Positions 5,099 through 62,495 of a stretch of DNA of 64,000 nt are shown one piece after another. The notes below the pieces were generated by a model, which saw only the letters and a list, made by a program, of their open reading frames with translations, was not told the DNA's origin and searched no databases. The DNA is taken from positions 1 to 64,000 of the IMG/VR virus record IMGVR_UViG_3300035703_000005, one strand, 5' to 3'. A program made the position numbers and the translations under genes. Position 1 is the stretch's first letter; every line of letters starts with the position of its first letter.

Positions 5099-5108
5099 TT
5101 TAATTGTT

Positions 5109-6307: not shown

Positions 6308-6618
6308 TATAGTTCAATTTCGTAGTTAATTTCTTTTAAATATCTTTTTATGTATTGTATTTTATATACACTATTTGTCATTGAATCATATGAAATTAAA
6401 CTATCATCAAATTCATTTAAATTAACTATTTCCATTTCACTGCCATCATTATCTTCTTCCAAAGCCCGCATTGCAATTCTAAACAGGTTTTGGATGAATT
6501 CTTTTAGAGTATATGAATGATACTTACTAAAACACAAATTAATTTTATCATTAATACTAAACAGTATTAAATCATTTTCTAACTCAGTGTCAATAATTTT
6601 AATTGATACACTTTCCAT
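6307..6618 (-). CDS. Hypothetical protein (103 aa)
   Basis: ORF track. Confidence 0.6.
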   Translation of the reverse strand: MESVSIKIIDTELENDLILFSINDKINLCFSKYHSYTLKEFIQNLFRIAMRALEEDNDGSEMEIVNLNEFDDSLISYDSMTNSVYKIQYIKRYLKEINYEIEL

Positions 6619-6657
6619 TTAAAATTAAATTATGTAGTAGATAATAATATTTATTCA

Positions 6658-7140: not shown

Positions 7141-7156
7141 ACAAATTTACTCAAAT

Positions 7157-8128: not shown

Positions 8129-8143
8129 TTTTGATACCTCCGA

Positions 8144-15013: not shown

Positions 15014-15048
15014 TGTGTTATCCTATAGCGACAAATCTATTCTTTTTA

Positions 15049-15056
15049 TATTTAGA
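15049..15056 (-). promoter_or_regulatory. T4-type late promoter variant TCTAAATA
   Basis: TAAATA core about 35 nt upstream of the fibre ATG. Confidence 0.5.
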
Positions 15057-49215: not shown

Positions 49216-50058
49216 ATGAACCCCGAAATATTAGATCTTCACATTACTCATAATTGCAATTTAACTTGCGAAAGTTGTTCAGATTTTACTAATAATAGTC
49301 TTTCTAAAATGTTATCATTAGAAGAGGCTAAAAATTGGATGTCTCTGTGGAATCAAAGGATAACTCCAAAAAATTTTCTTATTCTGGGAGGAGAACCTAC
49401 TCTCCACAAAGATTTGGAAAAATTTCTTTACTTGTCTAGAAAAATGTGGCCAAAAAGTAATTTAATATTAATTACTAACGGATTTTTCTTACATCTACAT
49501 GAAAATTTATGGAAAACTTTAAAAAATACTAATACAATATTATCAATTTCTTTGCATGATAATTCAAAAGAATATATGCAAAAAATAACTCAAAATTTAA
49601 TATTAGCAGAAAAATGGAATAAAGATCACGAAATAATAGTAACATGTAATAAAGAGTATGAAAAATGGAGTACTATCTATAAAGGGTATGGAGCAAACAT
49701 TTTACCCTTTGAAGACAATGATCCACAATCAAGTTGGAACAGTTGTTATATGGATGGCAAATGTTTCCAACTTCATGAGGGAAAAATTTGGAAATGTCCA
49801 CCCATTGCATATTTGCCTTTACAAAAAGAAAAATACAAAGATTTACTATCACCAAAGTGGGATCCATACTTAAAATATAAACCACTAGAATCGACTTGTA
49901 GTGACGAAGAAATAATAGAATTTTTTAATAGAAAGTGCGAATCGGTGTGCGGAATGTGTCCAGCAAATCCAATGATAAAAAATAAAGTTACAAAAAGCCC
50001 ACTAATGTCTGTTAGTGAAACTGAAAAATATTTTTCCACTCTAGAAAAACATATTTAA
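49216..50058 (+). CDS. Radical SAM protein, paralog 1
   Basis: CNLTCESC, GGEP, ITNG; C-terminal Cys cluster; ORF track starts at 49198. Confidence 0.88.
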   Translation: MNPEILDLHITHNCNLTCESCSDFTNNSLSKMLSLEEAKNWMSLWNQRITPKNFLILGGEPTLHKDLEKFLYLSRKMWPKSNLILITNGFFLHLHENLWKTLKNTNTILSISLHDNSKEYMQKITQNLILAEKWNKDHEIIVTCNKEYEKWSTIYKGYGANILPFEDNDPQSSWNSCYMDGKCFQLHEGKIWKCPPIAYLPLQKEKYKDLLSPKWDPYLKYKPLESTCSDEEIIEFFNRKCESVCGMCPANPMIKNKVTKSPLMSVSETEKYFSTLEKHI

Positions 50059-51217
50059 ACTCTGGTATGTTTTGAAGAAGATTTTCATTGCGTTCTATAT
50101 CAATTGCTTTATTTTTTCTCAAAAATCTTTTTACATTTTGTTCATTCATATCCAAATCTAAAATGTTTAAGATTGGTTTGAATTGATTTGATATGTCCGT
50201 TTTGTATTGTAAGTTATACTTATCGATAAAGGAAATTAATTTCTCTTTCGTTTTACCTTTAAATTCTGTTGGTAAAATATCAATTCCATATATACCAAAT
50301 TCAGTTGCACCATCTATCAAACTCAATTCAAAATTACAATAATTAAATTTCTCACTAATATATTCTATATCAGTAAGATATTGAATAATTTCAGGTAATC
50401 TAAAAACATTTAAACAAGATACAGTAATATTTGTAGATCTATTAAATTTTTGATTTGCAAGAATTTTTAAATTTTTATCTACTATTTTCCAGTTAGTACC
50501 TTTTCTAATATACTCTGCTCTATTTTCTATTTCATCTATGCTAACAAAAACTGTTAATTTGTTAGGATTCCATTGATTCCAATAATCTAATACGTTTTTA
50601 TTCTTATAAGATAAAATTGAAATATTTGTATTGTACCAAAGTTCTATATTAGTTTTTTTCTTTTCTATTAATTTTTGAAGTAATTCATATTGTTCATCCA
50701 TAAGGAGAGTTTCGCCACCAGCAAACTCTATTAACTCCAAACAGTCAATATTATCTTCTATAAATTTATCAATATCCAAATTTTCAGCATGTTCTAATAT
50801 TTTTCCAGTAAAAGAACTACTCAATCTTTCCGAACACATCCTGCATTTAAAATTACACTTATTGCTAATTTTAAAATCCCATCCTTTAAATTTTATTGTT
50901 TTTAAAGATCCATCTTTATTGGTATTTTTTAATATAGTAGGAAATGAGTCTTTAAAAAAATTATTATATTTCTCTCTTAAACTAATTCCATCCAACTTTT
51001 CAACATTTTTACAAGAAAGACACGAATCAGGTAGATCATCTTTCAATAAAGATAATCTAAAATTATTCATTTTTTCTCCATTCCAAATTTCATGCAGAGA
51101 ATTATTTTTTACATTACCTAATGACAAATCGTTAGCACAACATGGAGTAACTATTCCATCTGGAAAAATTTCTAAGTATATCCAGGGAACTATGCACTTA
51201 GGATAAGTATTTTTCAT
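50012..51217 (-). CDS. Radical SAM protein with N-terminal SPASM/twitch domain
   Basis: CIVPW...PCC..LGNV....L.EIWNG...C.SC followed by CNFKCRMC and GGET. Confidence 0.88.
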   Translation of the reverse strand: MKNTYPKCIVPWIYLEIFPDGIVTPCCANDLSLGNVKNNSLHEIWNGEKMNNFRLSLLKDDLPDSCLSCKNVEKLDGISLREKYNNFFKDSFPTILKNTNKDGSLKTIKFKGWDFKISNKCNFKCRMCSERLSSSFTGKILEHAENLDIDKFIEDNIDCLELIEFAGGETLLMDEQYELLQKLIEKKKTNIELWYNTNISILSYKNKNVLDYWNQWNPNKLTVFVSIDEIENRAEYIRKGTNWKIVDKNLKILANQKFNRSTNITVSCLNVFRLPEIIQYLTDIEYISEKFNYCNFELSLIDGATEFGIYGIDILPTEFKGKTKEKLISFIDKYNLQYKTDISNQFKPILNILDLDMNEQNVKRFLRKNKAIDIERNENLLQNIPEFKYVFLEWKNIFQFH

Positions 51218-51219
51218 AA

Positions 51220-52182
51220 TTATCCTCTTTCAAGATCCAAAGTAACGCAATGAAAACAACCACTCAATGTTCTTGTTTGTCTCATTGGAAGCATAATGCA
51301 TTCGATGTCATATTTTTCTAATTCTTTTCGTGTAGGTTCCTGATGTTTTTCGAGAGCAACTAAATTGGGATTAATACTAAAAAGATTCATATTACACCAA
51401 GGCGAACAGTTATTGTATCCAGGGTAATACCCAACATCAACTGGTTCTGGGCACCAGATTATATCCCATGTTTTAAATGGACCTGGTAAATCTTCTTTAC
51501 TTTTAATTCTTGAAGGGTTTGCAAGTAATAATCCTTCTCTTAGAAATGCTACCGTAGTGTCAATGTGCATATAACTATAAACACCTTGAAGTAAATGTAC
51601 TTTTATTTCAGGTCCTACTAAAGATTGAAGCAACTCTGCACCCTTTATATTACCACTATTTGATACCAAATATAATAAGTCATCGTTGGCTCTGATAATA
51701 TTAGCTGCATCAAATGAAGGTGAATGTTCAGTTAAGGCTAGAATTTCCTTATTTCCTAAACAATCCTCATTATATAATTCATCATCATAACTACAAGAAA
51801 GTGGAATCAAATTTTCGAAGTGATGTGCAATAGATCCAAAATTATATTTCCTGGATTTTAAAGGCATTGGAGCAGCAAAAGTTTTTCCCCCATGAACAAA
51901 TACGCAATCTCTTGGGCAAAAATTATAGTAGGGTGTTGCCTCTCGATGAGGTCTCAATACTTCCACACCTTCTTGTTCTAACACTTTAACAAAAATTTCT
52001 AAATCTTCGTTAGCTTCATCAATAACCTGTTTTGGATATAATCCGGATTTCACATCCGAAACATCTTTCCTATCAGCGTAATTAATAAATCTGAGAGAAT
52101 TATCTATTTCAGGAACTCTAGCATAATCAGCAATACCAACTATAACTTTTTTTAATTTATCCCATTCATTAGTACTGTTCAT
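51220..52182 (-). CDS. Amidinotransferase (glycine / inosamine-phosphate amidinotransferase family)
   Basis: NSTNEWDKLKKVIVG, CPRD, FDAAN, MHIDT and SGCFHCVT carrying the Cys-His-Asp triad residues. Confidence 0.88.
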   Translation of the reverse strand: MNSTNEWDKLKKVIVGIADYARVPEIDNSLRFINYADRKDVSDVKSGLYPKQVIDEANEDLEIFVKVLEQEGVEVLRPHREATPYYNFCPRDCVFVHGGKTFAAPMPLKSRKYNFGSIAHHFENLIPLSCSYDDELYNEDCLGNKEILALTEHSPSFDAANIIRANDDLLYLVSNSGNIKGAELLQSLVGPEIKVHLLQGVYSYMHIDTTVAFLREGLLLANPSRIKSKEDLPGPFKTWDIIWCPEPVDVGYYPGYNNCSPWCNMNLFSINPNLVALEKHQEPTRKELEKYDIECIMLPMRQTRTLSGCFHCVTLDLERG

Positions 52183-53066
52183 TTTAAATTATCAATAATT
52201 TTTTTTACGCCTTGTTTAAAGTTAATTGGAGAATAATTTGGATAATAATTTAAAAGTTTTGTTAAATCAGGAACTCTTCTTTTAGCACTACCACGTCTAC
52301 CTTCAATTAACTGATAATTTGGATAATCATGCCCCAATAAAGTTCCAATTATTTTAGAAACTTCTAAAGAACTCAGTTCTTCATTACTTCCGATATTTAT
52401 TGTTTCATGAATTGCACATTTTTCTACACAAATAATTGTCGATTCAATAGCATCTTCGATATAAGTATAACATCTTGTTTCATTTGGACCAATAACTTTA
52501 TAAATTCCAAGTTTATGATTATCAATTTGATCATAGACTATATGGCCACTTTTTGTTTCTGGTCCATAAACATTGAAATACCTAATAATTACCCAAGGCA
52601 AATCACTGTTATGCAAATAATTTTCTCCTACCATTTTAGAAATTTTATAACTCCAACGAGGATTTGAAAGATCATCAACTTCAACAGAGTTATTTTCATA
52701 ACAAATTTCGGAATGAGACATTATTTCACTACTACTAGCATAAACAATTTTTTTTAAATTTGTACACTTTTTTGCAAACTCAAATATATTGAGATCTACT
52801 CTTGTATTATTTGAAATAACTTCATTTGGTCTTTCATAAAAATTAGTTGTTCCATTAATGGCTGCAAGATGATAAATTACATCAACATTATCAGGTAAAA
52901 TTGCAGTAGATTTAGAAAGATCTGTTTTTAAAAAAATGTGAGATTTAGGAATAGTATTTGATCTAGACATATTATCTACGGCAATTACATAATGACCTTT
53001 ATCATTAAGTTGTTTACATAATTCTGATCCAATAAGACCGGCAGCTCCCGTCACCAAGATATTCAT
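52179..53066 (-). CDS. NAD-dependent epimerase/dehydratase (extended SDR)
   Basis: GAAGLIG, YASSS, YKISK (YxxxK), RYFNVYGP. Confidence 0.93.
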   Translation of the reverse strand: MNILVTGAAGLIGSELCKQLNDKGHYVIAVDNMSRSNTIPKSHIFLKTDLSKSTAILPDNVDVIYHLAAINGTTNFYERPNEVISNNTRVDLNIFEFAKKCTNLKKIVYASSSEIMSHSEICYENNSVEVDDLSNPRWSYKISKMVGENYLHNSDLPWVIIRYFNVYGPETKSGHIVYDQIDNHKLGIYKVIGPNETRCYTYIEDAIESTIICVEKCAIHETINIGSNEELSSLEVSKIIGTLLGHDYPNYQLIEGRRGSAKRRVPDLTKLLNYYPNYSPINFKQGVKKIIDNLK

Positions 53067-53803
53067 TTATCTTCTCTAACTGTAATTTTTAATTTGGAGT
53101 TATCATTTTTTATTGCTTTAAATAATTCAACATCTCCAAAAATATCAATCATAAAATCAATATCCTTTGGCAAACACTTTCCACCATATCCTCTTAGGTT
53201 ATCATTTACTTCAAGATACGATTGGCCATTTTTGGACTTATTGAATGCGTTTAATAAATTATTATAATTTACGTCATATTTTTTACACATATTATAGTAA
53301 TGATTTGCAAAAACAACTTTCATTGCATGATAATTATTTCGCATCATCTTTAAAAGTTCCAACTCGACAAATTCAAGTTTTCTGAGTTTATAATTAAATC
53401 TATCAAAATTAACCAACAAACTATTATCACAGTTTGTCGCATAAAACATTCTCTTACAATTGAGGGAATCTTCCAGAGAATATCTTTCCCTCAAAAATTC
53501 TGGAAGATATGTCAATGGATTTTTAATTTTTTCCTGCAAATTATTGAAAAATCCCGGAATTACTGTACTTCTAACCACAATTTCAATTGTAGGATTTAAT
53601 GAAGAAATATTTAAACAAAGAGACTCCAATTCTTCAATATTTTGTTGAGTATTAGTTGGAATGCAAACAAAAACTAAATCACAATTAGAAATATCTTCTA
53701 AACTAGTATCTAAAAAAATATCGTGTATAATTATACTTTCATCGGGAAAAAGAGCTTTTTTTGTTGCCTTTCCAACTATTCCATATCCAACAATTCCGAT
53801 CAT
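53063..53803 (-). CDS. UDP-glucose/GDP-mannose dehydrogenase family protein, short form
   Basis: GYGIVG, FVCIPT, RSTVIPG, PEFLRE, GYGGKCLPKD. Confidence 0.9.
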   Translation of the reverse strand: MIGIVGYGIVGKATKKALFPDESIIIHDIFLDTSLEDISNCDLVFVCIPTNTQQNIEELESLCLNISSLNPTIEIVVRSTVIPGFFNNLQEKIKNPLTYLPEFLRERYSLEDSLNCKRMFYATNCDNSLLVNFDRFNYKLRKLEFVELELLKMMRNNYHAMKVVFANHYYNMCKKYDVNYNNLLNAFNKSKNGQSYLEVNDNLRGYGGKCLPKDIDFMIDIFGDVELFKAIKNDNSKLKITVREDK

Positions 53804-54306
53804 TTTAAAACTCCTGTTATTTGAATTGCATATCTATCTTCTAGACTAAGATTATAAAAAGCATGTGTTTTCAAATAATCCCACCCAAAACAATCTCCAG
53901 GATTCCAATTTGTAAAAAAATTATCCTCAATTTGAAGTATTTGGCCAGATATACCCTCTTCTAACATTACAACATATCTAACTATTTTGTCAATAGGTAC
54001 ATTATAAATTTTAATGTATTTTTCAAAAATATCTATATGCAAAGGCAGATATTGTCCAGGTTTAAAGTAATTGATAGCTACTGCAACATTATTCAAAAAA
54101 TTAAATTGTGGAATAATGTATTCAAATACACAATCTGGCATAAAACTAGGTTGATGACAATTATAAAGAGTCATATGATTTTCACTATGACCAGAATCTA
54201 TATATTGATTCATTAATTTTTGGTCTTTGTGTGTAGTAAGAAAATAATCGAGGTGGTGAAAATCAGATATTTCCCACTTTGGTGTTATATTAAACTTTTT
54301 GATCAT
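53800..54306 (-). CDS. Cupin / 2OG-Fe(II)-like hypothetical protein
   Basis: PGQYLPLHID, W.PGDCF.W....HAFYN, RYAIQITG. Confidence 0.6.
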   Translation of the reverse strand: MIKKFNITPKWEISDFHHLDYFLTTHKDQKLMNQYIDSGHSENHMTLYNCHQPSFMPDCVFEYIIPQFNFLNNVAVAINYFKPGQYLPLHIDIFEKYIKIYNVPIDKIVRYVVMLEEGISGQILQIEDNFFTNWNPGDCFGWDYLKTHAFYNLSLEDRYAIQITGVLK

Positions 54307-55091
54307 TTTCTTAATAATGGGGAATTTTTCTTTAAGGATTTTTTATTAGAAGGGCACATAGAACAAAATTTTTCTGCACCTTTATCAAAAAAATCTTCCA
54401 ATTCTTTGTCTGTACAATTTGGGGACAATGGGACATATTCCAAATAAGGATCCCATTTTTCGGATATATCATACTTTTCTTTCATCATAGGAAGAAATGC
54501 TAGTGGAGCACATTTCCATATTTTTCCTTGATGTAATTGAAAACATATTTGACCTGTTGGACAATTTTCCCAACTTTGTTTAGGATTATTATCTTCAAAA
54601 GGCATTATATCTTTACCATATCCCAAGTAAACTTGATTCCAATCTTTTATAGAATTATAAATTTTAATCTTAACTCCTTTGGATTTCCAGTCATTTATTG
54701 TTAATATTTTTTTACGTATTAATTGCAAATATGTCGGGTCATTACTATGAATAGAAATTGACAATGTAATATCATTTTTAATAATATCTTCAAATATTTC
54801 CGAATGCAAATGAATTAGAGTAAGATTGGTCACAATTTCTATATTAGAATTTGGCCACATTTTCCTAGTCAAATAACAATACTCTTTCAAATTTTTATGC
54901 AAAAATGGTTCACCACCCAATATTCCAATATTATCTGGAATTAATCTTTCATTCCAATAAGACATCCACAATTCACACTCGTTTAAACTAACATGAGTAT
55001 CAAATCCATGATTCATAAAATGCGAACAACTATCACAAGTAAAGTTACATTTATGTGTAATGTGAATATCTAAATTTGGAATTCTTTTCAT
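54303..55091 (-). CDS. Radical SAM protein, paralog 2
   Basis: CNFTCDSC, GGEP; collinear with 49216..50058; ATGA coupling at 55088-55091. Confidence 0.88.
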   Translation of the reverse strand: MKRIPNLDIHITHKCNFTCDSCSHFMNHGFDTHVSLNECELWMSYWNERLIPDNIGILGGEPFLHKNLKEYCYLTRKMWPNSNIEIVTNLTLIHLHSEIFEDIIKNDITLSISIHSNDPTYLQLIRKKILTINDWKSKGVKIKIYNSIKDWNQVYLGYGKDIMPFEDNNPKQSWENCPTGQICFQLHQGKIWKCAPLAFLPMMKEKYDISEKWDPYLEYVPLSPNCTDKELEDFFDKGAEKFCSMCPSNKKSLKKNSPLLRK

Positions 55092-55678
55092 TTTTGAAAT
55101 ACAGACATATTGGGTAAGTAAGGATAATCCCTGTGGCTCCATTTTTTACCGGGAATTTTTTTCCGCTCATTTAGTAATTCAATTCCCGTTTTGGCCACCT
55201 CTGGAGTCATGTAGTAATGATACCCAATAGTATCTATGTCTTGTTCAGCCCATGGACGACTAAGATCACGACCATCATAAGACATTTTTTTTAATTCACG
55301 ATAATCATTTTTATCAGACAAAAGAATCATTCCACCTCTACCCAAAGGTAAATGTTTTTTAAATTGAAAACTTAAACACATAAAAGTATTTGAGATATAT
55401 GTGTTTTCCCCCCAAAAAACTGCTGCATCAATAATATTAGTGTTACCTAAACGATAATAATTATCCCACTCTTCGTTTTTCCAATTCCATCTCAATCCCA
55501 ATTTCATTAAAGTCATGGGAACTGAAATGTATGTTTGTGTAGGTATCGTTATATCATTACACCCAGTATATCGTAAACACAATTCTAATGCATGAGTACA
55601 AGAATCAGTGGCTACCCCATATGGGGAACCAAAAAATTCGGATACTTTTTGTTCAAAATCAGATACTAAATGAAACAT
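55088..55678 (-). CDS. DegT/DnrJ/EryC1/StrS PLP aminotransferase, shortened
   Basis: FE..V.EFFG, SCTHALEL, IIDAA, SFQFKKHL..GRGGMI. Confidence 0.85.
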   Translation of the reverse strand: MFHLVSDFEQKVSEFFGSPYGVATDSCTHALELCLRYTGCNDITIPTQTYISVPMTLMKLGLRWNWKNEEWDNYYRLGNTNIIDAAVFWGENTYISNTFMCLSFQFKKHLPLGRGGMILLSDKNDYRELKKMSYDGRDLSRPWAEQDIDTIGYHYYMTPEVAKTGIELLNERKKIPGKKWSHRDYPYLPNMSVFQK

Positions 55679-55697: not shown

Positions 55698-56585
55698 TTA
55701 TTGATTTTCCAATTCATCAATATTATTAACATTTATTATAAAGTCATTCGGTTTGCCATAAAGAAAAAAATCTTCCAAAGAATAAGAATCTCTAAATTTT
55801 TTCCACCATAAATTTACAGCTCTATTAGTAAAATGTAGTCCAGGAAAGTCAGATGTTCTAATTATATTCTTAGTATAACTTCCAATTGTATTACTTTGAG
55901 CTATTAATGGCAAACAATAAGTAACTCCAGAATGGCCCATGATATAGTCTATGGTTACATTTGGGTGATGTCTTATAGCATGATGATACCATTTGGGTTC
56001 TAACAATCTACTACATTGAGTCCATTGGAAATTAGAAACTCTTTTTGTCAAATCAAATTTCCCATCTGTAGTGATACGTTTAATAATTTTTTCAACATAA
56101 GATCTAGTTACTAAAGCACCTCCCATTGAATGTTTTGCCAAAATTCTATGCAAAAAACATGGAATCATTGCATCATTTTCAAAAGACAGTAAAATACAAT
56201 CCCAATCATATGGAATAATATTCATTAAATATTGCCAATCAAAGTGCCAGTAATCAATAAAACTAAGATCATAGTCATCTTCCATTAATAAAACATACTG
56301 ATCATTAGTTGTTTCTAACCAATGTTTTATTAATTCCAAATAAGTCAAAGTAATAGCGCAATGTATGATGTGTAACGACTTTCTAGGGTCTATATCGACA
56401 TCATTTAAAATTAATTTATCTTTCCATTCAGAAAAGTTATGAAGTTGATATTTAGAAGTAGAATATCGAGTAAAAGTTTTTATTTTATATTTTTCATATT
56501 GGGTTTCAGTATATTCTCTTCTATCTGGTCTTTCATCCAGATTTAAATAAATGATGGGAGGTAATCCTTTTAATTTATCAGTCAT
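55698..56585 (-). CDS. Glycosyltransferase family 25-like
   Basis: YLNLDERPDRR, LLMEDD. Confidence 0.75.
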   Translation of the reverse strand: MTDKLKGLPPIIYLNLDERPDRREYTETQYEKYKIKTFTRYSTSKYQLHNFSEWKDKLILNDVDIDPRKSLHIIHCAITLTYLELIKHWLETTNDQYVLLMEDDYDLSFIDYWHFDWQYLMNIIPYDWDCILLSFENDAMIPCFLHRILAKHSMGGALVTRSYVEKIIKRITTDGKFDLTKRVSNFQWTQCSRLLEPKWYHHAIRHHPNVTIDYIMGHSGVTYCLPLIAQSNTIGSYTKNIIRTSDFPGLHFTNRAVNLWWKKFRDSYSLEDFFLYGKPNDFIINVNNIDELENQ

Positions 56586-56587
56586 GT

Positions 56588-57397
56588 TTATAATTTAGGA
56601 AGAGCTATATAATTTTGAGAGTCTATTTTATTTACGTTCCACTCATAAAGTCTTTTAACAACAATATCTTCAACTCTACCATAAATTTGTCTATTTTTTT
56701 TATTATGTTCTAAAGCTAAAAGAACCGATATTTTTTTATCTAAAATATCAGTATCGTATTTTTCGAAAAGGTCTTCTCTTATTTTTTGTTCATATTCTTC
56801 CATTTCTGGATTATTATAAGTTCCCTCAAAATTTTCAACTCTTTTTGAATATGGATGTGGTAAATGAATAACTCTATTACTTTGTGGTATTATCTTTTTT
56901 ATAGACATTCCAGATAATTTTAATCTACCCAAAATCTCATCATCTTCAAAGGAATAATACTTACCCATTTTTTCATTATATCCATTAACACGCAAAAAAT
57001 CTTTTTTTCTGATGTATAACAATCCAAATATTCCTCTATATAAATCATTTTTTATATGATTAATTCCAGAAATACATGAATTTTCTTCAAGTATATAATC
57101 TTCAAAAAAATTATAATAGGGATTTAATATATGATCACAGTCAAGTTTTAATAATTTATCTGAAGACGCTACATCTGCGGCTAAGTTTAAAGGTTGAGGT
57201 TGATTAAAATACTTTTGATTAGGAACTGTTATTATTTTTATTCTCTTATCTAAAGAAGTCAAATGATTGATAGGAACATCGGAACTCCAATCGACAATAA
57301 TAATTTCAGATACTTCTGGAAACATTATCCAAGTATTTAAAGAAATAATTAAAGATTTTTCTCTATTCTTACAAGCGCAAATTATACTTACAGACAT
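56588..57397 (-). CDS. Glycosyltransferase, GT-A fold (GT2/GT7-like)
   Basis: IIIVDWSSD, LNLAA, KLDCD (DxD), F..VNGYNE.M..Y..EDDE. Confidence 0.8.
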   Translation of the reverse strand: MSVSIICACKNREKSLIISLNTWIMFPEVSEIIIVDWSSDVPINHLTSLDKRIKIITVPNQKYFNQPQPLNLAADVASSDKLLKLDCDHILNPYYNFFEDYILEENSCISGINHIKNDLYRGIFGLLYIRKKDFLRVNGYNEKMGKYYSFEDDEILGRLKLSGMSIKKIIPQSNRVIHLPHPYSKRVENFEGTYNNPEMEEYEQKIREDLFEKYDTDILDKKISVLLALEHNKKNRQIYGRVEDIVVKRLYEWNVNKIDSQNYIALPKL

Positions 57398-57406
57398 AAT
57401 ATATTA

Positions 57407-58261
57407 TTAATAAACTATAGGGATCATAAGATTTTTTCTTTGATATGAATCTAGTGAAAATAAATCGGTTAATGAAAATTTATCACTTTCTTCTTTCCAC
57501 CATTTTAATGTAAAATAATCAGATTTTTTGGCCATTGAATTTATAGGTTCTTTGTAACCATTACTACTAACGCTGGAAGTAGTGATAAACAGGGGAAATG
57601 AATATGTGATTCCTATTTCATAGGGAACAAAGTCTGCAGATTGGTAGTGATAAATTGGCCAATTATCTCCATATCCATAGTTTTCATACAATTGAAATTT
57701 TCCATTTACATAGTGCATTTCAATTAATTTTTTTGCATATCTCCTATTAATTAAATAACAAGTTGCAGAATGATTATTCCGTGTCCTTTTCGTAAGACCC
57801 ATTGGTACATATTTTTCACCTATAATATGCAACTGTACACAATCCCAGTTAATCGGTAAGTGTTGCTCAAAATATTTCCAATTAAAATTCCAATATTTGG
57901 TTGTTAAAAATGAAAGATCATCTTCCAAAATTAAACAAGTTTCTGACACAGAGTTGTTATACCAATCAACTATACTCTGTAGTTGATTAATTAAAATCGA
58001 TAAACAACTTATTTTGTTATTTATTTTTTTTATTAATAATTTATTCTTCCATTCATTAAAATTTTGAGGAGAGTGTTTATTAGCAGACACTCTCACATAA
58101 TCAGTTATACCAAATATGTTGAATTGATTTTCAATGTATTCTTTTCTATCTGTCCTTTCATCAAGATTTAAATATCTAATATGGGGAATGCCCTTGAGTT
58201 TATATTTGATATTTTCAACATCAGACATACCATGTAATAACAGAATATCTAGTTCCTTCAA
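57407..58261 (-). CDS. Glycosyltransferase family 25-like, paralog
   Basis: YLNLDERTDRK, LILEDD, LP.NWDCVQL, YLINRRYAKKL. Confidence 0.75.
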   Translation of the reverse strand: MKELDILLLHGMSDVENIKYKLKGIPHIRYLNLDERTDRKEYIENQFNIFGITDYVRVSANKHSPQNFNEWKNKLLIKKINNKISCLSILINQLQSIVDWYNNSVSETCLILEDDLSFLTTKYWNFNWKYFEQHLPINWDCVQLHIIGEKYVPMGLTKRTRNNHSATCYLINRRYAKKLIEMHYVNGKFQLYENYGYGDNWPIYHYQSADFVPYEIGITYSFPLFITTSSVSSNGYKEPINSMAKKSDYFTLKWWKEESDKFSLTDLFSLDSYQRKNLMIPIVY

Positions 58262-59423
58262 TAACAGGCATTATTTCGTGAGGGTACATAAAATTAGAAG
58301 GAAATACAATTACAGATCCAACACTGTTACGAATCATCATTTCTCTATCAAAAAATGCAAATTCACCTCCCACATAGTCATCATTTAAAGTTAGAGAACA
58401 GGATACACTTCTTTGTTGATGAATAAACGAATCTGTATGTTGAGTGTAAAATTGTCCAGATTCATACATCAATAAGTCATATCCTGTATCAATACTGGGA
58501 GAAAATTCTAAAAATTCTTTTGAATACATTTCAACTACTTTTAATAGTTGTTGGTGAAGTTCTACATCTATAAATTTTCTAACTTCGTAATTTTTATCTA
58601 TGATATTAGAATCAGAAAGTTGAATAACAGAACAATTTCTAATATTAGTATTTAAAATTCCATCCCCAACTAAAGTTTTATTCCATTCTTGACTATTTTT
58701 GTATTCTTGCAATATTTTATTACAAAGATCTGCAGACACAACATTATCATAAATTTTAATAAAATCTTCCAACTTTCTGGTAGATTTTAATGTGATTGAA
58801 GAAATATGTTGATCCGATTTTACAATACTATTTTCTTCTTTAGTTGTAGTTTTATTTTCTTTTTTATCAGACTCAATCAAATTCGATTCTTTTTCTTTAT
58901 CAAAATAAGCATAAGAACACTCACCACGACTTCTTACATAATGCAAGAAAACCTGTGAATAGTAACTACCTTTATACTCTTCTCTCCAGTGTGGTGCAAT
59001 ACGTCCAAGATAGACCATTGCATCACCTGGATTTAAACTAACAAATTTTTTTTCTTTTTGAGGAGTTTCGATCCAGATTGGCCATGGATAATCACCATCA
59101 AGATGTAATGTCAATGAAATTTCACAGGCATCTCTGTCAACATGATTCTCCAGAACAGATCCCTCCTTATATACTCTTGCGTAAGAATAGGTGGGAAGAA
59201 CAGTTTCCTCAATTAATGTAGATACTTCGGGAGTTTTTTCACAAAGTAATTCCAAAAAAGAAATATGATTATATATTGAATGTGAATTTGGAGATTGATC
59301 ATCTCCTGATAAATTTTCTTTTTCACAATAAAGTTTAAATTCATCGGACAAAATTTTAGATCTTTCGGGAGAAATAAAATTAGGAATGATCAAATAATTA
59401 TTTTCAATTAGTTTATTATTCAT
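58221..59423 (-). CDS. Tandem two-domain 2OG-Fe(II) dioxygenase
   Basis: Domain 1 HVDRDACEISLT...HWR...FLHYV; domain 2 HTD...YVGG...HEI.PV..GTRYSVITW. Confidence 0.88.
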   Translation of the reverse strand: MNNKLIENNYLIIPNFISPERSKILSDEFKLYCEKENLSGDDQSPNSHSIYNHISFLELLCEKTPEVSTLIEETVLPTYSYARVYKEGSVLENHVDRDACEISLTLHLDGDYPWPIWIETPQKEKKFVSLNPGDAMVYLGRIAPHWREEYKGSYYSQVFLHYVRSRGECSYAYFDKEKESNLIESDKKENKTTTKEENSIVKSDQHISSITLKSTRKLEDFIKIYDNVVSADLCNKILQEYKNSQEWNKTLVGDGILNTNIRNCSVIQLSDSNIIDKNYEVRKFIDVELHQQLLKVVEMYSKEFLEFSPSIDTGYDLLMYESGQFYTQHTDSFIHQQRSVSCSLTLNDDYVGGEFAFFDREMMIRNSVGSVIVFPSNFMYPHEIMPVIEGTRYSVITWYV

Positions 59424-59451
59424 AGTTAATTGGACAAAAAGTTATATAAAA

Positions 59452-59874
59452 TCAAAGATCTGCAAGAAGTTTTTCAATATCAAAATCCATATCTCCATAA
59501 ACAGCTGCCATTGCAGCTTCTTCTTCTTCTTTTAATCTCTGGGCTTCGGCTTCTGCTGCTGCAATTCTTTCTTCTTCTGCAAGTTTAGATTTTTCCCAAA
59601 GAAAAATTGATCTTTCATAAATTCCTAGTTCTTTAATTATAAAATTTGGAACTGTTTTTTTGAATTCAATTTCTCCATAAGCTTCATCTAATCCAAAACC
59701 ATACTCGCCCTCTTCATCGGGATCACCATACCATTGTAACGCATGAAATTTTCCCCAAGTTTTTAGATCATAACCTTCTATCCAACTAAGATCATCAAAT
59801 TCACTCAGATCTGCATAGTATCCAATGCCATCTTTAATGATGAGATTATCATCTCTGATTATTGTCAATCTCAT
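59452..59874 (-). CDS. Hypothetical protein, possible fibre assembly factor
   Basis: MRLTII..D..I..DG, HALQWY, acidic Ala-rich tail; follows the fibre genes. Confidence 0.5.
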   Translation of the reverse strand: MRLTIIRDDNLIIKDGIGYYADLSEFDDLSWIEGYDLKTWGKFHALQWYGDPDEEGEYGFGLDEAYGEIEFKKTVPNFIIKELGIYERSIFLWEKSKLAEEERIAAAEAEAQRLKEEEEAAMAAVYGDMDFDIEKLLADL

Positions 59875-60211
59875 TATTTTCTTCTCCTTTTAAAATATTT
59901 TGATTAGTTAAAGGGGTAACATTAACTGGAAGAATTTGTTGTTGCATAAGGCCTTGAATATATAGTTCTTTATTTTCTTCGTTAGCTTTTACAACTTCAT
60001 TTCTAAATGATTCTACAGCTGCTGCAGTAGATCTTTGTTGTTGAGAATTTTCAATAGTCATTATGGGAAGCCAAGTTATAGCACAACCCCATTCGTCAAT
60101 GTCTTCACCAGTGTTTGGATTCATTCCACGGACTCTCATAAACCAAGAACACTTTAGTCCAATACAATCTTTTTTAATAAGAGGACAAAATTTACCTTGT
60201 TCTAATTTCAT
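59849..60211 (-). CDS. Cys-rich conserved hypothetical protein
   Basis: CPLIKKDCIGLKCSWF...WGCA..WLP; probable start MKLEQGK. Confidence 0.65.
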   Translation of the reverse strand: MKLEQGKFCPLIKKDCIGLKCSWFMRVRGMNPNTGEDIDEWGCAITWLPIMTIENSQQQRSTAAAVESFRNEVVKANEENKELYIQGLMQQQILPVNVTPLTNQNILKGEENNEIDNNQR

Positions 60212-60246
60212 AAAATAAAAAATATCTAGATTTAGTATAACACAAA

Positions 60247-60774
60247 TTATGCAAAAGTACAATATATTACGTTAATATATTGTACTCTAAAATCTACAGA
60301 AGTATTAAGGGGACCATTAGCTGAAGTAAAAGTAACTGGATGAGTGTGAGATCCACTATTACCATTATTACCAGTATTACCACCATTAGCAACTCTAGTA
60401 ACACTTCCAAAAGTAGGAGAAGGAGATCCAGTTTGAGCATTACCTCCAGAATTAGCTGGATGAGCATGTTGTACCATGGTATTTACATCAATGGTATTCG
60501 CATTAGCTGCAAGTCCAGAAATTGATACAGGGACATTAGCAGTTACGGGTACAGAAATAAGAGTATTCGTAAATACATTTGTTCCGCCTGAACCTGCTCC
60601 AGTTCCACTAACTACTCTTAACGTTTTATCATTATGAGTTGTTACTATAGACCATCCAGTTGGTGCTGATGCCTGATAAAAAACGACAGGTGTTGTTTGT
60701 GGAAAAATACCATATTTGGAATTTAATGAAGTAGAGTCACTAAAAGTTATTCCAGTGCTTGTTAATACTGCCAT
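60247..60774 (-). CDS. Short tail fibre / collar-like protein, paralog 1
   Basis: FYQASAPTGW...HNDKTLRVVSG, HAHP, GSHTHP, DFRVQYINVIYC. Confidence 0.7.
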   Translation of the reverse strand: MAVLTSTGITFSDSTSLNSKYGIFPQTTPVVFYQASAPTGWSIVTTHNDKTLRVVSGTGAGSGGTNVFTNTLISVPVTANVPVSISGLAANANTIDVNTMVQHAHPANSGGNAQTGSPSPTFGSVTRVANGGNTGNNGNSGSHTHPVTFTSANGPLNTSVDFRVQYINVIYCTFA

Positions 60775-60795
60775 TTTTTTATAATTTTATTTTAT

Positions 60796-61332
60796 TTAGT
60801 TTAAAGTGCAGATAATAACATCTACATATTGGACCCTAAAATCAAGAGTAGTTGCACCAGGGCCATTGGCTGAAGAAAAAGTAACTGGATGAGAGTGAGA
60901 TCCACTATTACCATAGTTACCTGTACTATTTCCAGGAGCTGTACCACCCTGAGATCCTGACGCAGGGCTGGCACCACCAGCACCTACGTTTCCTCCAGAA
61001 TTTAGTGGATGAGCATGTTGAGGTACTGTATTAACACTTAAAGTTGTACCTCCAGCAGATAATCCGGAAATTGATACTGGAACATTAGCACTCACTGGGC
61101 GACTAGCAAATGTTCCAGAAAAAGTATTTGTTCCAGCAGCAGTTCCACCACTGGTGGTATTATTAACCACTCTCAATGCTTTATCATTTTGGGTAGTTAC
61201 TTGAGTCCATCCAGTTGGAGCAGCAGACCTTATAAAAACCATAGGAGTTGACTGAGGAATGATTCCATATTTGGAATTTAAAGTCCCTCCGCCACTACCA
61301 AAGATTATTCCAGTGCTTGTTAATACTGCCAT
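60796..61332 (-). CDS. Short tail fibre / collar-like protein, paralog 2
   Basis: Same architecture: APTGWTQ...NDKALRV, HAHP, GSHSHP, DFRVQYVDVIIC. Confidence 0.7.
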   Translation of the reverse strand: MAVLTSTGIIFGSGGGTLNSKYGIIPQSTPMVFIRSAAPTGWTQVTTQNDKALRVVNNTTSGGTAAGTNTFSGTFASRPVSANVPVSISGLSAGGTTLSVNTVPQHAHPLNSGGNVGAGGASPASGSQGGTAPGNSTGNYGNSGSHSHPVTFSSANGPGATTLDFRVQYVDVIICTLN

Positions 61333-61362
61333 TTTATGACACTTTTTCGATTATTTTCATAT

Positions 61363-61884
61363 TTATCCGTTAAAACTACATATAATAATGTCTACATATT
61401 GAACTCTGAAGTCAAGAGTTGTGCTCCATGGACCACTAGCTGATGTGAATGATGCTGGATGACCATGACCTCCACTATTACCATAGTTACCTGTACTATT
61501 TCCAGGAGCAACACATACTACACCTCCAGAAGAACCTCCGGTATTACCTCCATTATTTGCAGGATGTCCATGTATAGGTATAGTATTAACACTTAAAGTT
61601 GTACCTTGAACAGTTAATCCACTAATTGATACAGGAACATTAGCACTTATAGATCTATTAGTAAACGTATTACTAAAAGCATTAGTTCCACCTGCGCCTC
61701 CGCCGGTTCCACTAACAACTCTTAATATTTTATCATTTTGAGTAGTTACTTGAGTCCAATTTGTTGGAGCAGTAGATCTATAAAACAAAGAAACTGTACC
61801 AGAAGGTGCAAAAAAAGACGATCTTGCAGATACACTAGTTCCATCATTAAAATTTATTCCAGCAGCAGTTAATGTAGCAGGCAT
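61363..61884 (-). CDS. Short tail fibre / collar-like protein, paralog 3
   Basis: Same architecture: APTNWTQ...NDKILRV, HGHP, GGHGHP, DFRVQYVDIIIC. Confidence 0.7.
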   Translation of the reverse strand: MPATLTAAGINFNDGTSVSARSSFFAPSGTVSLFYRSTAPTNWTQVTTQNDKILRVVSGTGGGAGGTNAFSNTFTNRSISANVPVSISGLTVQGTTLSVNTIPIHGHPANNGGNTGGSSGGVVCVAPGNSTGNYGNSGGHGHPASFTSASGPWSTTLDFRVQYVDIIICSFNG

Positions 61885-61907
61885 TTATATAAAAGATATT
61901 TTTTTAT

Positions 61908-61915
61908 TATTTATA
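61908..61915 (-). promoter_or_regulatory. T4 late promoter TATAAATA upstream of the fibre triplet
   Basis: Exact consensus 23 nt upstream of the ATG at 61884. Confidence 0.7.
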
Positions 61916-61919
61916 GAAT

Positions 61920-62495
61920 TTAATGATATGCATGAGTGTATAGCCAACCAGTACACAAATATTTTACCACCCCTTTAGGAGGCATAATTCCTCTATGAAT
62001 AAAATCCCAAGTTGCGGGGAAAAAAATTAATTTACCCTCTTCTGGTTTTATTTTAGTTCCATCTATAAATTCTGTTTCTCCGCCACCCTCTACATCATTT
62101 AAATACCAAATAAAAGTTATTCTTCTAACACCATTGCAATCATCTCTACAAAAATCATGATGCCAATTATAAAAACCTTCTCCACCAATAGTTCTTTGTA
62201 TTTGATATCCAGTATCGTTGAGATCTAAATCAGTTATATTAGTATATAAATTTTCAAGTAAATATTGTTTATATTCTTTTAATCCATCATTCAAAGACTG
62301 GTAAAAGATTTTATCTTCCTTTTCCCAACCAGCCATATGGCTTATTGCAATGTCAGTAGATACTTTTACTTTATTATTAAGTCCACCTAAAGTTTTACCA
62401 GAACATTTTCTAAGATCCCTTTCAAATTTATAAATAACATTCTTACAAAATTCACTAGTTAAAGCATTTTGTTTTTCCCATATAAATTTATTCAT
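61920..62495 (-). CDS. 2OG-Fe(II) dioxygenase
   Basis: YNWHHD, RRITFIWYLNDVEGGGETEF, KPEEG...FP....HRG, KY..TGW. Confidence 0.9.
   Translation of the reverse strand: MNKFIWEKQNALTSEFCKNVIYKFERDLRKCSGKTLGGLNNKVKVSTDIAISHMAGWEKEDKIFYQSLNDGLKEYKQYLLENLYTNITDLDLNDTGYQIQRTIGGEGFYNWHHDFCRDDCNGVRRITFIWYLNDVEGGGETEFIDGTKIKPEEGKLIFFPATWDFIHRGIMPPKGVVKYLCTGWLYTHAYH

What the first reader, a model, noticed from the sequence alone, without database searches (positions are those of the whole stretch)
55698..62495. Recurring architecture: fibre genes followed by Cys-rich accessory gene, hydroxylases and transferases under late control
Seen: a TATAAATA box at 61908-61915 precedes three fibre paralogs, then a Cys-rich ORF, a putative assembly factor, a double dioxygenase and three glycosyltransferases, all co-oriented with gaps under 40 nt and no obvious terminator. 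The 3-15 kb region repeats the logic (fibre, adhesin, hydroxylases, sulfotransferase, Cys-rich ORF). Inference: a general virion-fibre post-translational tailoring system that travels as a cassette with its substrate.
Basis: inference. Interest (0 to 1): 0.7.

Follow-up and report, generated by a model that had tools for sequence, protein, structure and literature searches.

The report
Phage tail-fibre module with linked hydroxylases
A freshwater T4-like cyanophage carries three small tail-fibre-tip genes behind late promoters, always followed by an unnamed four-cysteine partner gene and, in this phage lineage only, by protein-hydroxylase-like and sugar-transfer enzymes that may chemically tailor the fibres, which is plausible and testable but not shown.

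Summary
The described gene string is real. On the minus strand lie a P4H-like oxygenase, three paralogous 173-178 aa proteins, a 120-aa four-Cys protein, a 140-aa protein, a 400-aa double 2OG oxygenase and three glycosyltransferases. Seven sugar-nucleotide or radical-SAM genes follow. The paralogs are tail-fibre tip domains: two invariant HxH motifs, profile matches to solved fibres, and the C-terminus of a podophage tail fibre. Late-type boxes (TATAAATA, GATAAATA, ACTAAATA) precede the three fibre genes. An ATAAATA box precedes the first fibre gene in 47 of 53 non-redundant related loci and almost never the enzyme genes. The universal cassette is fibre tip plus the four-Cys protein: 54 of 58 bacterial or archaeal genome loci, without enzymes. 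That partner family has about 1,700 clusters and no name. Fibre-cys-X-double oxygenase is kept through four flank architectures, but a cys tree needs only one gain of that linkage. Glycosyltransferases follow in only two of the four architecture classes. Isolates show the fibre genes and enzyme cassette apart, and the oxygenases without the fibre family. Fibre tailoring is therefore partly supported: about 0.5 for hydroxylation, 0.3 for glycosylation. There is no direct evidence. Re-searching existing S-SCSM1 virion mass spectra would test it.

The parts
61920..62495 (-). oxyA: 191-aa prolyl-4-hydroxylase-like 2OG-Fe(II) oxygenase. It lies upstream of the late box.
   Evidence: PF13640 scores 55.9 bits against a cut-off of 27. 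phrog_61 matches at 6e-34. The nearest solved relatives are prolyl 4-hydroxylases (5c5t at 2.5e-5, 3itq, 7zsc). An HxD...H...K motif is readable in the translation.
61908..61915 (-). TATAAATA late-promoter-type box, 23 nt before the fibA ATG.
   Evidence: ATAAATA lies 12-35 nt before the first fib gene in 47 of 53 non-redundant related loci. NATAAATA is the published cyanomyovirus late promoter (PMC2984593).
61363..61884 (-). fibA: 173-aa fibre-tip paralog with two HxH motifs.
61360..61367 (-). GATAAATA late-type box, 27 nt before the fibB ATG. It overlaps the fibA stop codon.
   Evidence: ATAAATA precedes the second fib gene in 21 of 51 loci.
60796..61332 (-). fibB: 178-aa fibre-tip paralog, used as the reference sequence.
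   Evidence: 552 metagenomic homologs, none named. H106, H108, H146 and H148 are invariant in 46 sequences. The profile matches solved tail fibres 9qgo (3e-6) and 9nxk (1e-4), identified.
60793..60800 (-). ACTAAATA variant box, 18 nt before the fibC ATG. It overlaps the fibB stop codon.
   Evidence: The same aaCTAAATA is kept before the third fib gene in most three-copy loci.
60247..60774 (-). fibC: 175-aa fibre-tip paralog.
59849..60211 (-). cys: 120-aa protein with four conserved Cys (C9, C16, C21, C43) and the motif IENSQQQR.T..AVESFRNE. It is the obligate partner of the fibre-tip domain. The family is unnamed.
   Evidence: It follows the fib gene(s), directly or after one intervening ORF, in all related phage loci with enough flank. 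It follows the fib domain in podophage CRP-361 at 51% identity. An ORF with the fib domain lies upstream of cys in 54 of 58 bacterial or archaeal genome loci. The family has 1,714 clusters at 50% identity. It has no Pfam, PHROG or NCBIfam hit, and every source calls it 'hypothetical'. The AF2 model has pLDDT 67.5 and shows a small beta N-terminal part followed by a long helix at 44-90. No fold match was found.
59452..59874 (-). asm: 140-aa protein. Its N-terminal about 50 residues (MRLTII..D..I.DG...HALQW) are shared with a Tfa-like tail-fibre assembly protein. The rest is rich in Glu and Ala.
   Evidence: BLASTP against CRP-361 gp41 gives E 4e-5 over the N-terminus. gp41 itself matches tail-fibre-assembly PHROGs. 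The N-terminus is also shared with S-SCSM1 ORF247 at E 4e-4. asm has no family hit of its own.
58221..59423 (-). dblOxy: 400-aa double 2OG-Fe(II) oxygenase.
   Evidence: The C-terminal half matches PF13640 at 58.3 bits. phrog_3531, phrog_2954 and phrog_61 cover both halves. HVD...H and HTD...H...R motifs are readable in the translation. The nearest solved relatives are protein prolyl hydroxylases (3dkq, 4iw3, EGLN1; weak). It lies downstream of fib-cys-X in all related phage loci with enough flank.
57407..58228 (-). GT25a: GT25-like glycosyltransferase.
   Evidence: phrog_2835 matches at 2e-42. PF01755 scores only 15.1 bits against a cut-off of 24. It is 28% identical (E 1e-32) to a genome paralog that passes PF01755 at 59 bits.
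56588..57397 (-). GT2/GT7C-type glycosyltransferase.
   Evidence: PF02709 scores 34.6 bits against a cut-off of 23. There are weak matches to beta-1,4-galactosyltransferase structures.
55698..56585 (-). GT25b: second GT25-like glycosyltransferase.
   Evidence: phrog_2835 matches at 1e-31. It is 31% identical to GT25a.
50012..55678 (-). Co-directional continuation of the string. It holds a truncated DegT-type aminotransferase (196 aa), a radical SAM protein (279 aa), a 168-aa unknown, a UDP-Glc-dehydrogenase-like protein (246 aa), an NAD epimerase/dehydratase (295 aa), an amidinotransferase-like protein (320 aa) and a twitch radical SAM protein (401 aa).
   Evidence: The same genes follow the glycosyltransferases in relatives.
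3727..15055 (-). Second, non-homologous fibre-plus-hydroxylase cluster. It starts with a CTAAATA box (15049-15055). Then come the 2289-aa fibre (8144-15013), a 323-aa fibre-like protein (7157-8128), an AspH-like protein (6658-7140) and an AATAAATA box (6648-6655). Last come a 103-aa ORF, a 172-aa ORF, 2OG_Oxy_5 (5109-5792), 2OG_Oxy_3 (4535-5098) and a sulfotransferase (3727-4554).
   Evidence: In relatives the fibre, the 323-aa protein, the 172-aa protein, AspH and Oxy_5 stay together in shuffled order. CTAAATA also precedes the giant fibre gene there.

Best explanation
This is a late-expressed accessory receptor-binding module of a freshwater T4-like cyanomyovirus.

Three paralogous proteins of about 175 aa are fibre-tip domains, each with two HxH motifs like the tips of solved tail fibres. 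Each is read from its own late-type box. The 120-aa four-Cys/long-helix protein is their obligate partner. The 140-aa protein, with a Tfa-like N-terminus, is a second helper. Both most likely act in folding, trimerisation or metal loading of the tip.

In one clade of cyanomyovirus-type phages a P4H-like double dioxygenase has become fixed directly behind this unit, usually with further 2OG oxygenases. My committed reading is that these oxygenases hydroxylate proteins of the fibre module in the cytoplasm late in infection. The candidate site is the proline right after the second HxH, with P85 and P158 as further candidates.

In the window's subtype, the GT25-like and GT2 transferases and the sugar-nucleotide genes that follow without a promoter or terminator would then build a glycan on the fibres. 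This would resemble collagen or Skp1 hydroxy-amino-acid glycosylation.

Shown: gene identities, module conservation, promoter boxes. Inferred: every enzymatic step and its substrate.

Sub-probabilities: fibre-tip plus partner module 0.9; late promoter 0.85; oxygenases act on the fibre module 0.5; glycosyltransferases glycosylate fibres 0.3.
For: Fibre identity:
- Two HxH motifs are invariant in 46 sequences.
- The family profile matches solved fibres 9qgo (Photorhabdus PVC) and 9nxk (phage Pa223) across both HxH motifs.
- The domain is the C-terminal about 156 aa of CRP-361 gp39, a 914-aa protein that matches many tail-fibre PHROGs.
- The S-SCSM1 homolog is deposited as 'tail fiber protein (virion protein)'. 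The authors' HHpred and Phyre results point to T4 gp10 and gp37.

Partner proteins:
- cys follows the fib gene(s), directly or after one intervening ORF, in all related phage loci with enough flank, in CRP-361, and in 54 of 58 bacterial or archaeal genome loci.
- The asm N-terminus is shared with a Tfa-like protein.

Late control:
- ATAAATA lies 12-35 nt before the first fib gene in 47 of 53 non-redundant loci.
- It is found before cys in 0 of 8, dblOxy in 0 of 48, oxyA in 0 of 14 and GT25b in 4 of 57.
- In the window, all three fib genes and the giant fibre gene have (A/C)TAAATA boxes. Apart from an AATAAATA box before the 103-aa ORF that heads the cluster-1 hydroxylase/sulfotransferase string, no enzyme gene has a box of its own.
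- NATAAATA is the published late promoter.

Link to the oxygenases:
- fib-cys-X-dblOxy is kept in four architecture classes with different flanks on both sides.
- In this genome 3 of 4 PF13640 genes, the only PF13759 gene and the AspH-like gene lie beside fibre genes.
- Two further, non-homologous associations exist. The giant fibre sits with AspH and Oxy_5, conserved but shuffled in order. The S-SCSM2R fib pair is followed by a different 530-aa 2OG oxygenase, sugar epimerases and GT10.
- The nearest solved relatives of oxyA and dblOxy are protein prolyl hydroxylases.
- Prolines P85, P149 and P158 are conserved in oxygenase-linked fibs (0.87-0.96) and rare in enzyme-free prophage fibs (0-0.13).
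Against: No modified residue has been observed.
- The oxygenase linkage needs only one gain on the cys tree (SH-aLRT 97). The many loci therefore count as one event plus retention. The proline contrast is confounded by the same split.
- The fibre tip plus cys works without any oxygenase in a podophage and in dozens of prophage-like loci.
- S-SCSM2R has oxyA-cys-asm-dblOxy-GTs without fib genes and without a late box. S-T4 has oxyA-dblOxy but no detectable homolog of the fibre paralog in its genome and no cys homolog in the region fetched around the pair. ACG-2014f has a dblOxy-like gene among nucleotide-metabolism genes.
- dblOxy homologs occur in 166 phage records, fib in 4.
- Two of the four architecture classes (B and C) lack glycosyltransferases.
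- A second GT25/GT11 sugar cluster in the same genome lies next to pstS and a porin gene, not next to fibres.
- Read-through from upstream non-late promoters cannot be excluded.
- The complex prediction gave no answer.
Confidence: 0.45

Rival explanations
1. The enzymes are a cell-envelope (LPS or exopolysaccharide) or other non-virion remodelling island of the kind described for P-SSM2, S-SCSM1 and S-SCSM2R. It happens to sit behind a fibre module after one historical insertion in a hyperplastic region and is kept there by inertia. The fibres are not its substrate.
For: - The downstream genes are typical nucleotide-sugar tailoring genes (UGDH-like, epimerase/dehydratase, DegT, amidinotransferase-like, radical SAM).
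- The literature reads homologous genes as host-surface or DNA modification (PMC2984593; PMC12801897).
- One gain explains the linkage.
- The enzyme cassette is separated from fib in S-SCSM2R. S-T4 has the oxygenase pair but no detectable homolog of the fibre paralog.
- Classes B and C lack glycosyltransferases.
- A second sugar cluster in this genome is not fibre-linked.
Against: - The core fib-cys-X-dblOxy survived at least three turnovers of both flanks.
- The enzyme genes have no promoter box of their own, and the gaps are too short for one.
- The oxygenases are of the protein-prolyl-hydroxylase type, not sugar- or lipid-modifying types.
- Fibre-plus-oxygenase pairing recurs with unrelated fibres and unrelated oxygenases.
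Confidence: 0.35
2. The oxygenases and glycosyltransferases hypermodify phage DNA: base hydroxylation followed by glycosylation, as with TET/JBP-plus-glycosyltransferase systems or T4 glucosylation. This would let the phage escape restriction.
For: Phage 2OG oxygenase plus glycosyltransferase pairs for DNA are known (own knowledge). The S-SCSM2R authors suggest DNA glucosylation. The genome also encodes a Mom-family DNA modifier.
Against: A full Pfam scan gives only P4H-type families (PF13640, PF13661) and no TET/JBP or AlkB family. The nearest structures are protein hydroxylases. The genes sit behind late structural genes, not in the replication module. The one 2OG gene that does sit in the replication module is a separate gene.
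Confidence: 0.05
3. The oxygenases serve the fibre module in another way than by hydroxylating the tip. For example, they might act on the cys or Tfa-like proteins, or on another virion protein. The glycosyltransferase and sugar genes would be functionally unrelated neighbours.
For: In S-SCSM2R, cys and asm stay with oxyA and dblOxy rather than with fib. Glycosyltransferases are optional across classes. S-SCSM2R virion preparations contain another 2OG oxygenase and an amidinotransferase (PMC12801897).
Against: There is no specific evidence for any alternative substrate. cys is highly conserved with or without oxygenases.
Confidence: 0.15

Closest known systems
Tail-fibre plus dedicated chaperone/adhesin modules (T4 gp37-gp38/gp57A, lambda Stf-Tfa, Mu S-U)
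   Same: A receptor-binding fibre gene is followed directly by small accessory genes needed for its assembly. HxH motifs occur in the tip as in T4-type fibres (authors' HHpred/Phyre hits to T4 gp10 and gp37). The third gene shares an N-terminus with a Tfa-like protein.
   Different: The tips here are free-standing proteins of about 175 aa in one to three tandem copies. The first accessory protein (four Cys plus a long helix) matches no known chaperone family or fold. Its role is inferred from position only.
Solved fibre tips: Photorhabdus PVC tail fibre (9qgo) and Pseudomonas phage Pa223 tail fibre (9nxk)
   Same: The profile alignment covers the APTGW collar-like segment and both HxH motifs.
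   Different: The similarity is distant (E 3e-6 and 1e-4). The solved proteins are longer fibres. No oxygenase or cys context is known for them from this work.
Virus-encoded protein hydroxylation and glycosylation (PBCV-1 prolyl 4-hydroxylase, Mimivirus L230 collagen hydroxylase-glucosyltransferase) and the cytoplasmic Skp1 hydroxyproline-glycan pathway (own knowledge)
   Same: A P4H-type oxygenase (best solved hit 5c5t, deposited as a prolyl 4-hydroxylase) lies next to soluble glycosyltransferases, including the GT25 type, and next to Gly/Pro/Ser/Thr-rich structural proteins.
   Different: Those are eukaryotic viruses or eukaryotes, and their substrates have been shown. Here the substrate is unknown, there are no collagen repeats, and GT25 membership of the two window genes is only indirect.
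Mycobacteriophage virion glycosylation by phage glycosyltransferases (Freeman et al. 2023, cited in PMC12801897)
   Same: Phage-encoded glycosyltransferases placed next to structural genes and proposed or shown to decorate virion proteins.
   Different: In mycobacteriophages the capsid and tail tube are glycosylated and no hydroxylase is involved. In cyanophages no glycosylated virion protein has been reported in the papers read.
Cyanomyovirus 'LPS / cell-wall modification' gene clusters (P-SSM2, S-SCSM1, S-SCSM2R)
   Same: The same enzyme families and partly orthologous genes. The S-SCSM2R cassette is 47-76% identical gene for gene.
   Different: The published reading is host-surface or DNA modification. 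The link to a late-promoter fibre module and to the cys family was not noted in the papers read.

Membership tests
T4-type late promoter (cyanomyovirus NATAAATA) | Octamer NATAAATA placed as a -10 element a short distance upstream of a late (structural) gene | tested here: met
   TATAAATA lies 23 nt before fibA and GATAAATA 27 nt before fibB. ACTAAATA and TCTAAATA variants precede fibC and the giant fibre gene. Six of 16 NATAAATA sites in the window lie 19-29 nt before a same-strand start codon.
T4-type late promoter (cyanomyovirus NATAAATA) | Conservation of the box at the same place in diverged relatives | tested here: met
   47 of 53 non-redundant loci have the box before the first fib gene. 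It is found before dblOxy in 0 of 48 and before oxyA in 0 of 14.
T4-type late promoter (cyanomyovirus NATAAATA) | The genome encodes the late sigma gp55 (with gp33 and gp45), and transcripts start at the box late in infection | not tested
   gp55 was not searched for in G000. The literature states that all cyanomyoviruses carry g55 (PMC2984593). No RNA run was listed for this sequence.
HxH tail-fibre tip domain | Conserved HxH motifs (the metal-binding motifs of solved fibres) | tested here: met
   H106, H108, H146 and H148 are invariant in 46 sequences. They are kept in 87-91% of 47 distant prophage copies.
HxH tail-fibre tip domain | Sequence homology to fibres with solved structure or known position | tested here: met
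   The profile matches 9qgo at 3e-6 and 9nxk at 1e-4. The domain is the C-terminus of CRP-361 tail fibre gp39.
HxH tail-fibre tip domain | Trimeric, metal-binding, present in the virion | not testable with these tools
   The monomer AF2 model is poor (pLDDT 64). The complex job gave no answer. The S-SCSM1 homolog is deposited as a virion protein.
Prolyl-4-hydroxylase-type 2OG-Fe(II) oxygenase (PF13640) | Family profile above the curated cut-off and an intact HxD...H iron triad | tested here: met
   oxyA scores 55.9 bits and the dblOxy C-terminal half 58.3 bits, against a cut-off of 27. The motifs HHD...H...K, HTD...H...R and HVD...H are readable in the translations.
Prolyl-4-hydroxylase-type 2OG-Fe(II) oxygenase (PF13640) | Hydroxylates proline in a protein substrate | not testable with these tools
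   Only the nearest solved relatives point that way.
Glycosyltransferase family 25 | PF01755 profile above its cut-off | tested here: inconclusive
   GT25a scores 15.1 bits against a cut-off of 24, and GT25b has no hit. Both match phrog_2835 strongly. Both are 28% identical to a genome paralog that scores 59 bits on PF01755.
Tail-fibre assembly protein (Tfa-like) | Match to Tfa family profiles | tested here: not met
   asm has no PHROG, Pfam or NCBIfam match. Only its N-terminal about 50 aa resemble CRP-361 gp41, whose C-terminal part carries the Tfa match. It may work like a Tfa but cannot be filed as one.
Phage virion glycosylation / protein tailoring system | A virion protein carrying the modification, dependent on the linked enzymes | not testable with these tools
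   Needs mass spectrometry or genetics.
TET/JBP-type DNA base hydroxylase plus glycosyltransferase | Oxygenase of the TET/JBP family | tested here: not met
   A full Pfam scan of both oxygenases returns only PF13640 and PF13661.

The most novel reading that the evidence does not exclude
Cyanomyoviruses hydroxylate prolines in their receptor-binding fibre tips and, in some lineages, glycosylate them. They would do so with their own P4H-like dioxygenases, GT25-type transferases and tailored nucleotide sugars, giving a collagen- or Skp1-like hydroxy-amino-acid glycan pathway in a bacteriophage. This would give a function to part of the unexplained expansion of 2OG-Fe(II) oxygenase 'auxiliary metabolic genes' in cyanophages (up to 24 per genome). 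It would also add a chemical layer to host recognition. Alongside this, the unnamed four-Cys family would be a new, widespread class of fibre-tip assembly factor or metallochaperone.
Probability: 0.3. Interest if true: 0.85.

Novelty: new variant of a known kind. Interest (0 to 1): 0.6.

Why it matters
Cyanophage genomes are full of 2OG-Fe(II) oxygenase and glycosyltransferase genes. Their roles are guessed at (nitrogen sensing, host LPS, DNA glucosylation) and, in the papers read, have never been tested.

This work shows that one conserved oxygenase is genetically tied to a late-promoter fibre-tip module. In this genome nearly all such oxygenases sit beside fibres. That turns the question into a concrete experiment on an existing isolate, S-SCSM1, for which virion mass spectra already exist.

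Separately, the fibre-tip plus four-Cys pair is a very widespread, completely unannotated unit: about 1,700 sequence clusters across phages and prophage-like loci of many phyla. It could improve receptor-binding-protein annotation and inform host-range engineering in laboratory phage systems.

Tried and rejected
- AF2 monomer of fibB with 46 sequences: pLDDT 64, too poor for fold search.
- Complex of three fibB with three cys: no answer, so not used as evidence. These were left out and not sent elsewhere.
- Foldseek of the cys model against PDB and BFVD: only its own family matched.
- Protein atlas for cys and asm: nothing informative.
- Megablast of the region against isolated phages: no match.
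- RNA runs: none listed. The DNA holders are subsurface, lake and freshwater metagenomes, so transcript timing could not be checked.
- Sigma-70-type promoter and terminator scans: no more sites than in shuffles.
The cys alignment was used instead.
- Idea rejected, that the two 'Cys-rich ORFs' of the two clusters are related: the genome has a single cys homolog.
- Idea rejected, that many loci amount to many independent associations: the cys tree needs one gain.
- Idea rejected, that TATAAATA is enriched by count: it is not.

Full report
**What the window is.** The window is the first 64 kb of a single-contig 248,835-bp virus record rated complete. It carries T4-type baseplate and tail genes. 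It also carries uvsX, gp41 and DNA polymerase, a CpeT-like gene, pstS and a cyanobacterial-type porin gene, three tRNAs and a glutamine riboswitch. Near-identical DNA is held by subsurface, lake and freshwater metagenomes. It is therefore a freshwater T4-like cyanomyovirus-type phage. Of 103 called ORFs, 91 are on the minus strand, so co-orientation alone means little.

**Checking the observation.** Reading the minus strand from 62495 down to 55698, the genes are as follows.
- A 191-aa PF13640 oxygenase (oxyA).
- Three paralogs of 173, 178 and 175 aa (57-64% identical).
- A 120-aa protein with four Cys (cys).
- A 140-aa protein (asm).
- A 400-aa protein with two oxygenase halves (dblOxy).
- A GT25-like transferase, a GT2/GT7C transferase and a second GT25-like transferase.

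All gaps are 35 nt or less, or the genes overlap. No terminator-like hairpin lies on that strand.

The string continues without a break to 50012. It adds a DegT fragment, a radical SAM gene, an unknown ORF, a UGDH-like gene, an epimerase, an amidinotransferase-like gene and a twitch radical SAM gene.

The claimed parallel at 3-15 kb is also there. It holds a 2289-aa fibre with a Peptidase_S74 end, a 323-aa fibre-like protein, an Asp/Asn-hydroxylase-like protein, 2OG_Oxy_5, 2OG_Oxy_3 and a sulfotransferase. Its Cys-containing ORFs are unrelated to cys.

**The promoter box.** TATAAATA is not enriched by count: 5 found against 9.9 expected. Position and conservation are what matter.
- Six of 16 NATAAATA sites in the window lie 19-29 nt before a same-strand start codon.
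- fibA has TATAAATA, fibB has GATAAATA and fibC has ACTAAATA.
- The giant fibre gene has a hairpin with a T-run followed by CTAAATA.
- In 53 non-redundant related loci, ATAAATA lies 12-35 nt before the first fib gene in 47. Most of the rest have CTAAATA.
- ATAAATA precedes cys in 0 of 8, dblOxy in 0 of 48, oxyA in 0 of 14 and GT25b in 4 of 57.

NATAAATA is the published cyanomyovirus late promoter (PMC2984593). The box is therefore a real, fibre-specific late-type signal. The enzyme genes downstream have no box of their own, and there is no room for one. oxyA lies upstream of the box. Actual transcripts could not be examined.

**What the paralogs are.** They match no Pfam, PHROG or NCBIfam family. 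They belong to a family of more than 550 unnamed metagenomic proteins, with two invariant HxH motifs.

A profile of the family matches two solved tail fibres across both HxH motifs. These are the Photorhabdus PVC fibre 9qgo and the phage Pa223 fibre 9nxk.

In Roseobacter podophage CRP-361 the domain is the C-terminal about 156 residues of a 914-aa protein. That protein sits in the tail-fibre position and matches many tail-fibre PHROGs.

The S-SCSM1 homolog is deposited as 'tail fiber protein (virion protein)'. Its authors found HHpred and Phyre matches to T4 gp10 and gp37. 'Fibre tip' is well supported. Trimer formation and metal binding are not testable here.

**The real cassette.** Homologs of cys follow the fib gene(s), directly or after one intervening ORF, in every related phage locus with enough flank. 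A homolog follows CRP-361 gp39 at 51% identity, which is better conserved than the fibre domain itself.

Bacterial and archaeal genome contigs were searched with the cys profile. This gave 58 loci from many phyla. In 54 of them an ORF ending in the fib domain (150 to more than 1,300 aa) lies upstream of cys.

The family comprises 1,714 clusters at 50% identity. Every source calls its members 'hypothetical'.

Its model shows a small beta or zinc-ribbon-like N-terminal part with four conserved Cys, then a long helix. No fold relatives were found.

The third gene (asm, or longer proteins in other classes) shares an N-terminal segment with CRP-361 gp41. The C-terminus of gp41 matches tail-fibre-assembly families. 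The widely travelling unit is therefore fibre tip, cys and a Tfa-like helper. It travels without enzymes.

**The enzymes.** Across about 75 distinct loci there are four architecture classes with different genes on both sides. All four keep fib(x1-3)-cys-X-dblOxy. Glycosyltransferases, DegT and amidinotransferase follow in classes A and D only.

In this genome 3 of 4 PF13640 genes, the only PF13759 gene and the AspH-like gene lie beside the two fibre loci. The fourth PF13640 gene is the usual one between uvsX and gp41.

The giant-fibre cluster is likewise kept together in relatives, although in shuffled order. In S-SCSM2R the fib pair is followed by a different 530-aa oxygenase, sugar epimerases and GT10.

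The nearest solved relatives of oxyA and dblOxy are protein prolyl hydroxylases.

Three prolines are conserved in oxygenase-linked fibs and rare in enzyme-free ones. One of them follows the second HxH directly.

**What weakens the tailoring reading.**
- On a cys tree all 47 oxygenase-linked rows fall on one side of one branch (SH-aLRT 97). One gain explains the linkage, and the proline contrast is confounded by that same split.
- S-SCSM2R carries oxyA-cys-asm-dblOxy-GTs 38 kb from its fib genes and without a late box.
- S-T4 has oxyA-dblOxy but no detectable homolog of the fibre paralog in its genome and no cys homolog in the region fetched around the pair.
- ACG-2014f has a dblOxy-like gene among nucleotide-metabolism genes.
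- dblOxy homologs occur in 166 phage records, fib in 4.
- A second GT25/GT11 cluster in this genome is next to pstS and a porin gene.
- Published readings of homologous genes are host-surface or DNA modification.
- S-SCSM2R virion preparations contain another 2OG oxygenase and an amidinotransferase. This shows late abundance and nothing more.

**Verdict.** The locus is a late fibre-tip module with a new, obligate accessory family. In one phage clade a protein-hydroxylase-type oxygenase is fixed to it and often followed by a glycan-building gene set.

I put about 0.5 on the oxygenases acting on the fibre module and about 0.3 on fibre glycosylation. I put about 0.35 on the rival that the enzymes serve the cell envelope or another non-virion target.

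The decisive test is cheap. Re-search the existing S-SCSM1 virion spectra for hydroxylated or glycosylated ORF244/245 peptides.

Noticed in passing
window 15127-15738 (-): A Mom-family protein (PF25680, E 2e-22) lies just upstream of the giant fibre gene. It suggests Mu-type adenine modification of the phage DNA.
   Followed up: no
window 41839-41885 (-): A glutamine riboswitch (RF01739, 38.6 bits against a gathering score of 35) lies in a region of small ORFs.
   Followed up: no
window 15935-16698 (-) and 16021-16528 (-): Three tRNA genes (Thr-TGT, Leu-TAA, Ile-TAT) flank a CpeT-like gene. That gene has a perfect TATAAATA 20 nt before its start, so a pigment-related auxiliary gene is apparently under a late-type box.
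   Followed up: partly
window 15049-15082 (-): A hairpin CCTCCC-cata-GGGAGG with a T6 run is followed by CTAAATA, 35 nt before the 2289-aa fibre gene. The same CTAAATA precedes the homologous fibre gene in L161, L163 and L166. This suggests that CTAAATA is a working variant of the late box.
   Followed up: partly
window 49198-50058 (+) and 54303-55142 (-): Two radical SAM paralogs (46% identical) lie on opposite strands. The plus-strand copy converges on the end of the long minus-strand string. 50012-51217 is a twitch-domain radical SAM gene (NF033640, 298 bits).
   Followed up: no
G000:C1:78000-97000 (L095): A second sugar cluster holds a true GT25, two GT11, a GT2, UDP-glucose dehydrogenase and epimerase/dehydratase. 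It lies next to a carbamoyltransferase, PstS and an OprB-type porin with an SLH domain. It is not next to fibre genes.
   Followed up: partly
G000:C1:129785-130351 (L090:7785-8351): The only PF13640 oxygenase not beside a fibre locus sits between uvsX and the gp41 helicase.
   Followed up: partly
L091 and L094 (Synechococcus phage S-SCSM2R, PQ898602): This is a natural 'split' of the module. oxyA-cys-asm-dblOxy-GTs sit at 227-236 kb without fib genes. Two fib genes sit at 189 kb, followed by a wcaG RNA, a different 530-aa 2OG oxygenase, sugar epimerases and GT10.
   Followed up: yes
L096-L153 (bacterial and archaeal genome contigs): The four-Cys family is large (1,714 clusters at 50% identity), found in prophage-like loci of many phyla, and named nowhere. 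Several MAGs labelled Methanobacteriota, Bifidobacterium or Bacteroidetes carry near-identical phage-like contigs, which are probably binning contaminants.
   Followed up: partly
L154-L160: Homologs of the AspH-like 160-aa protein (68% identical) occur on seven contigs without any other gene of the giant-fibre cluster. That hydroxylase is therefore not strictly tied to the fibre.
   Followed up: no
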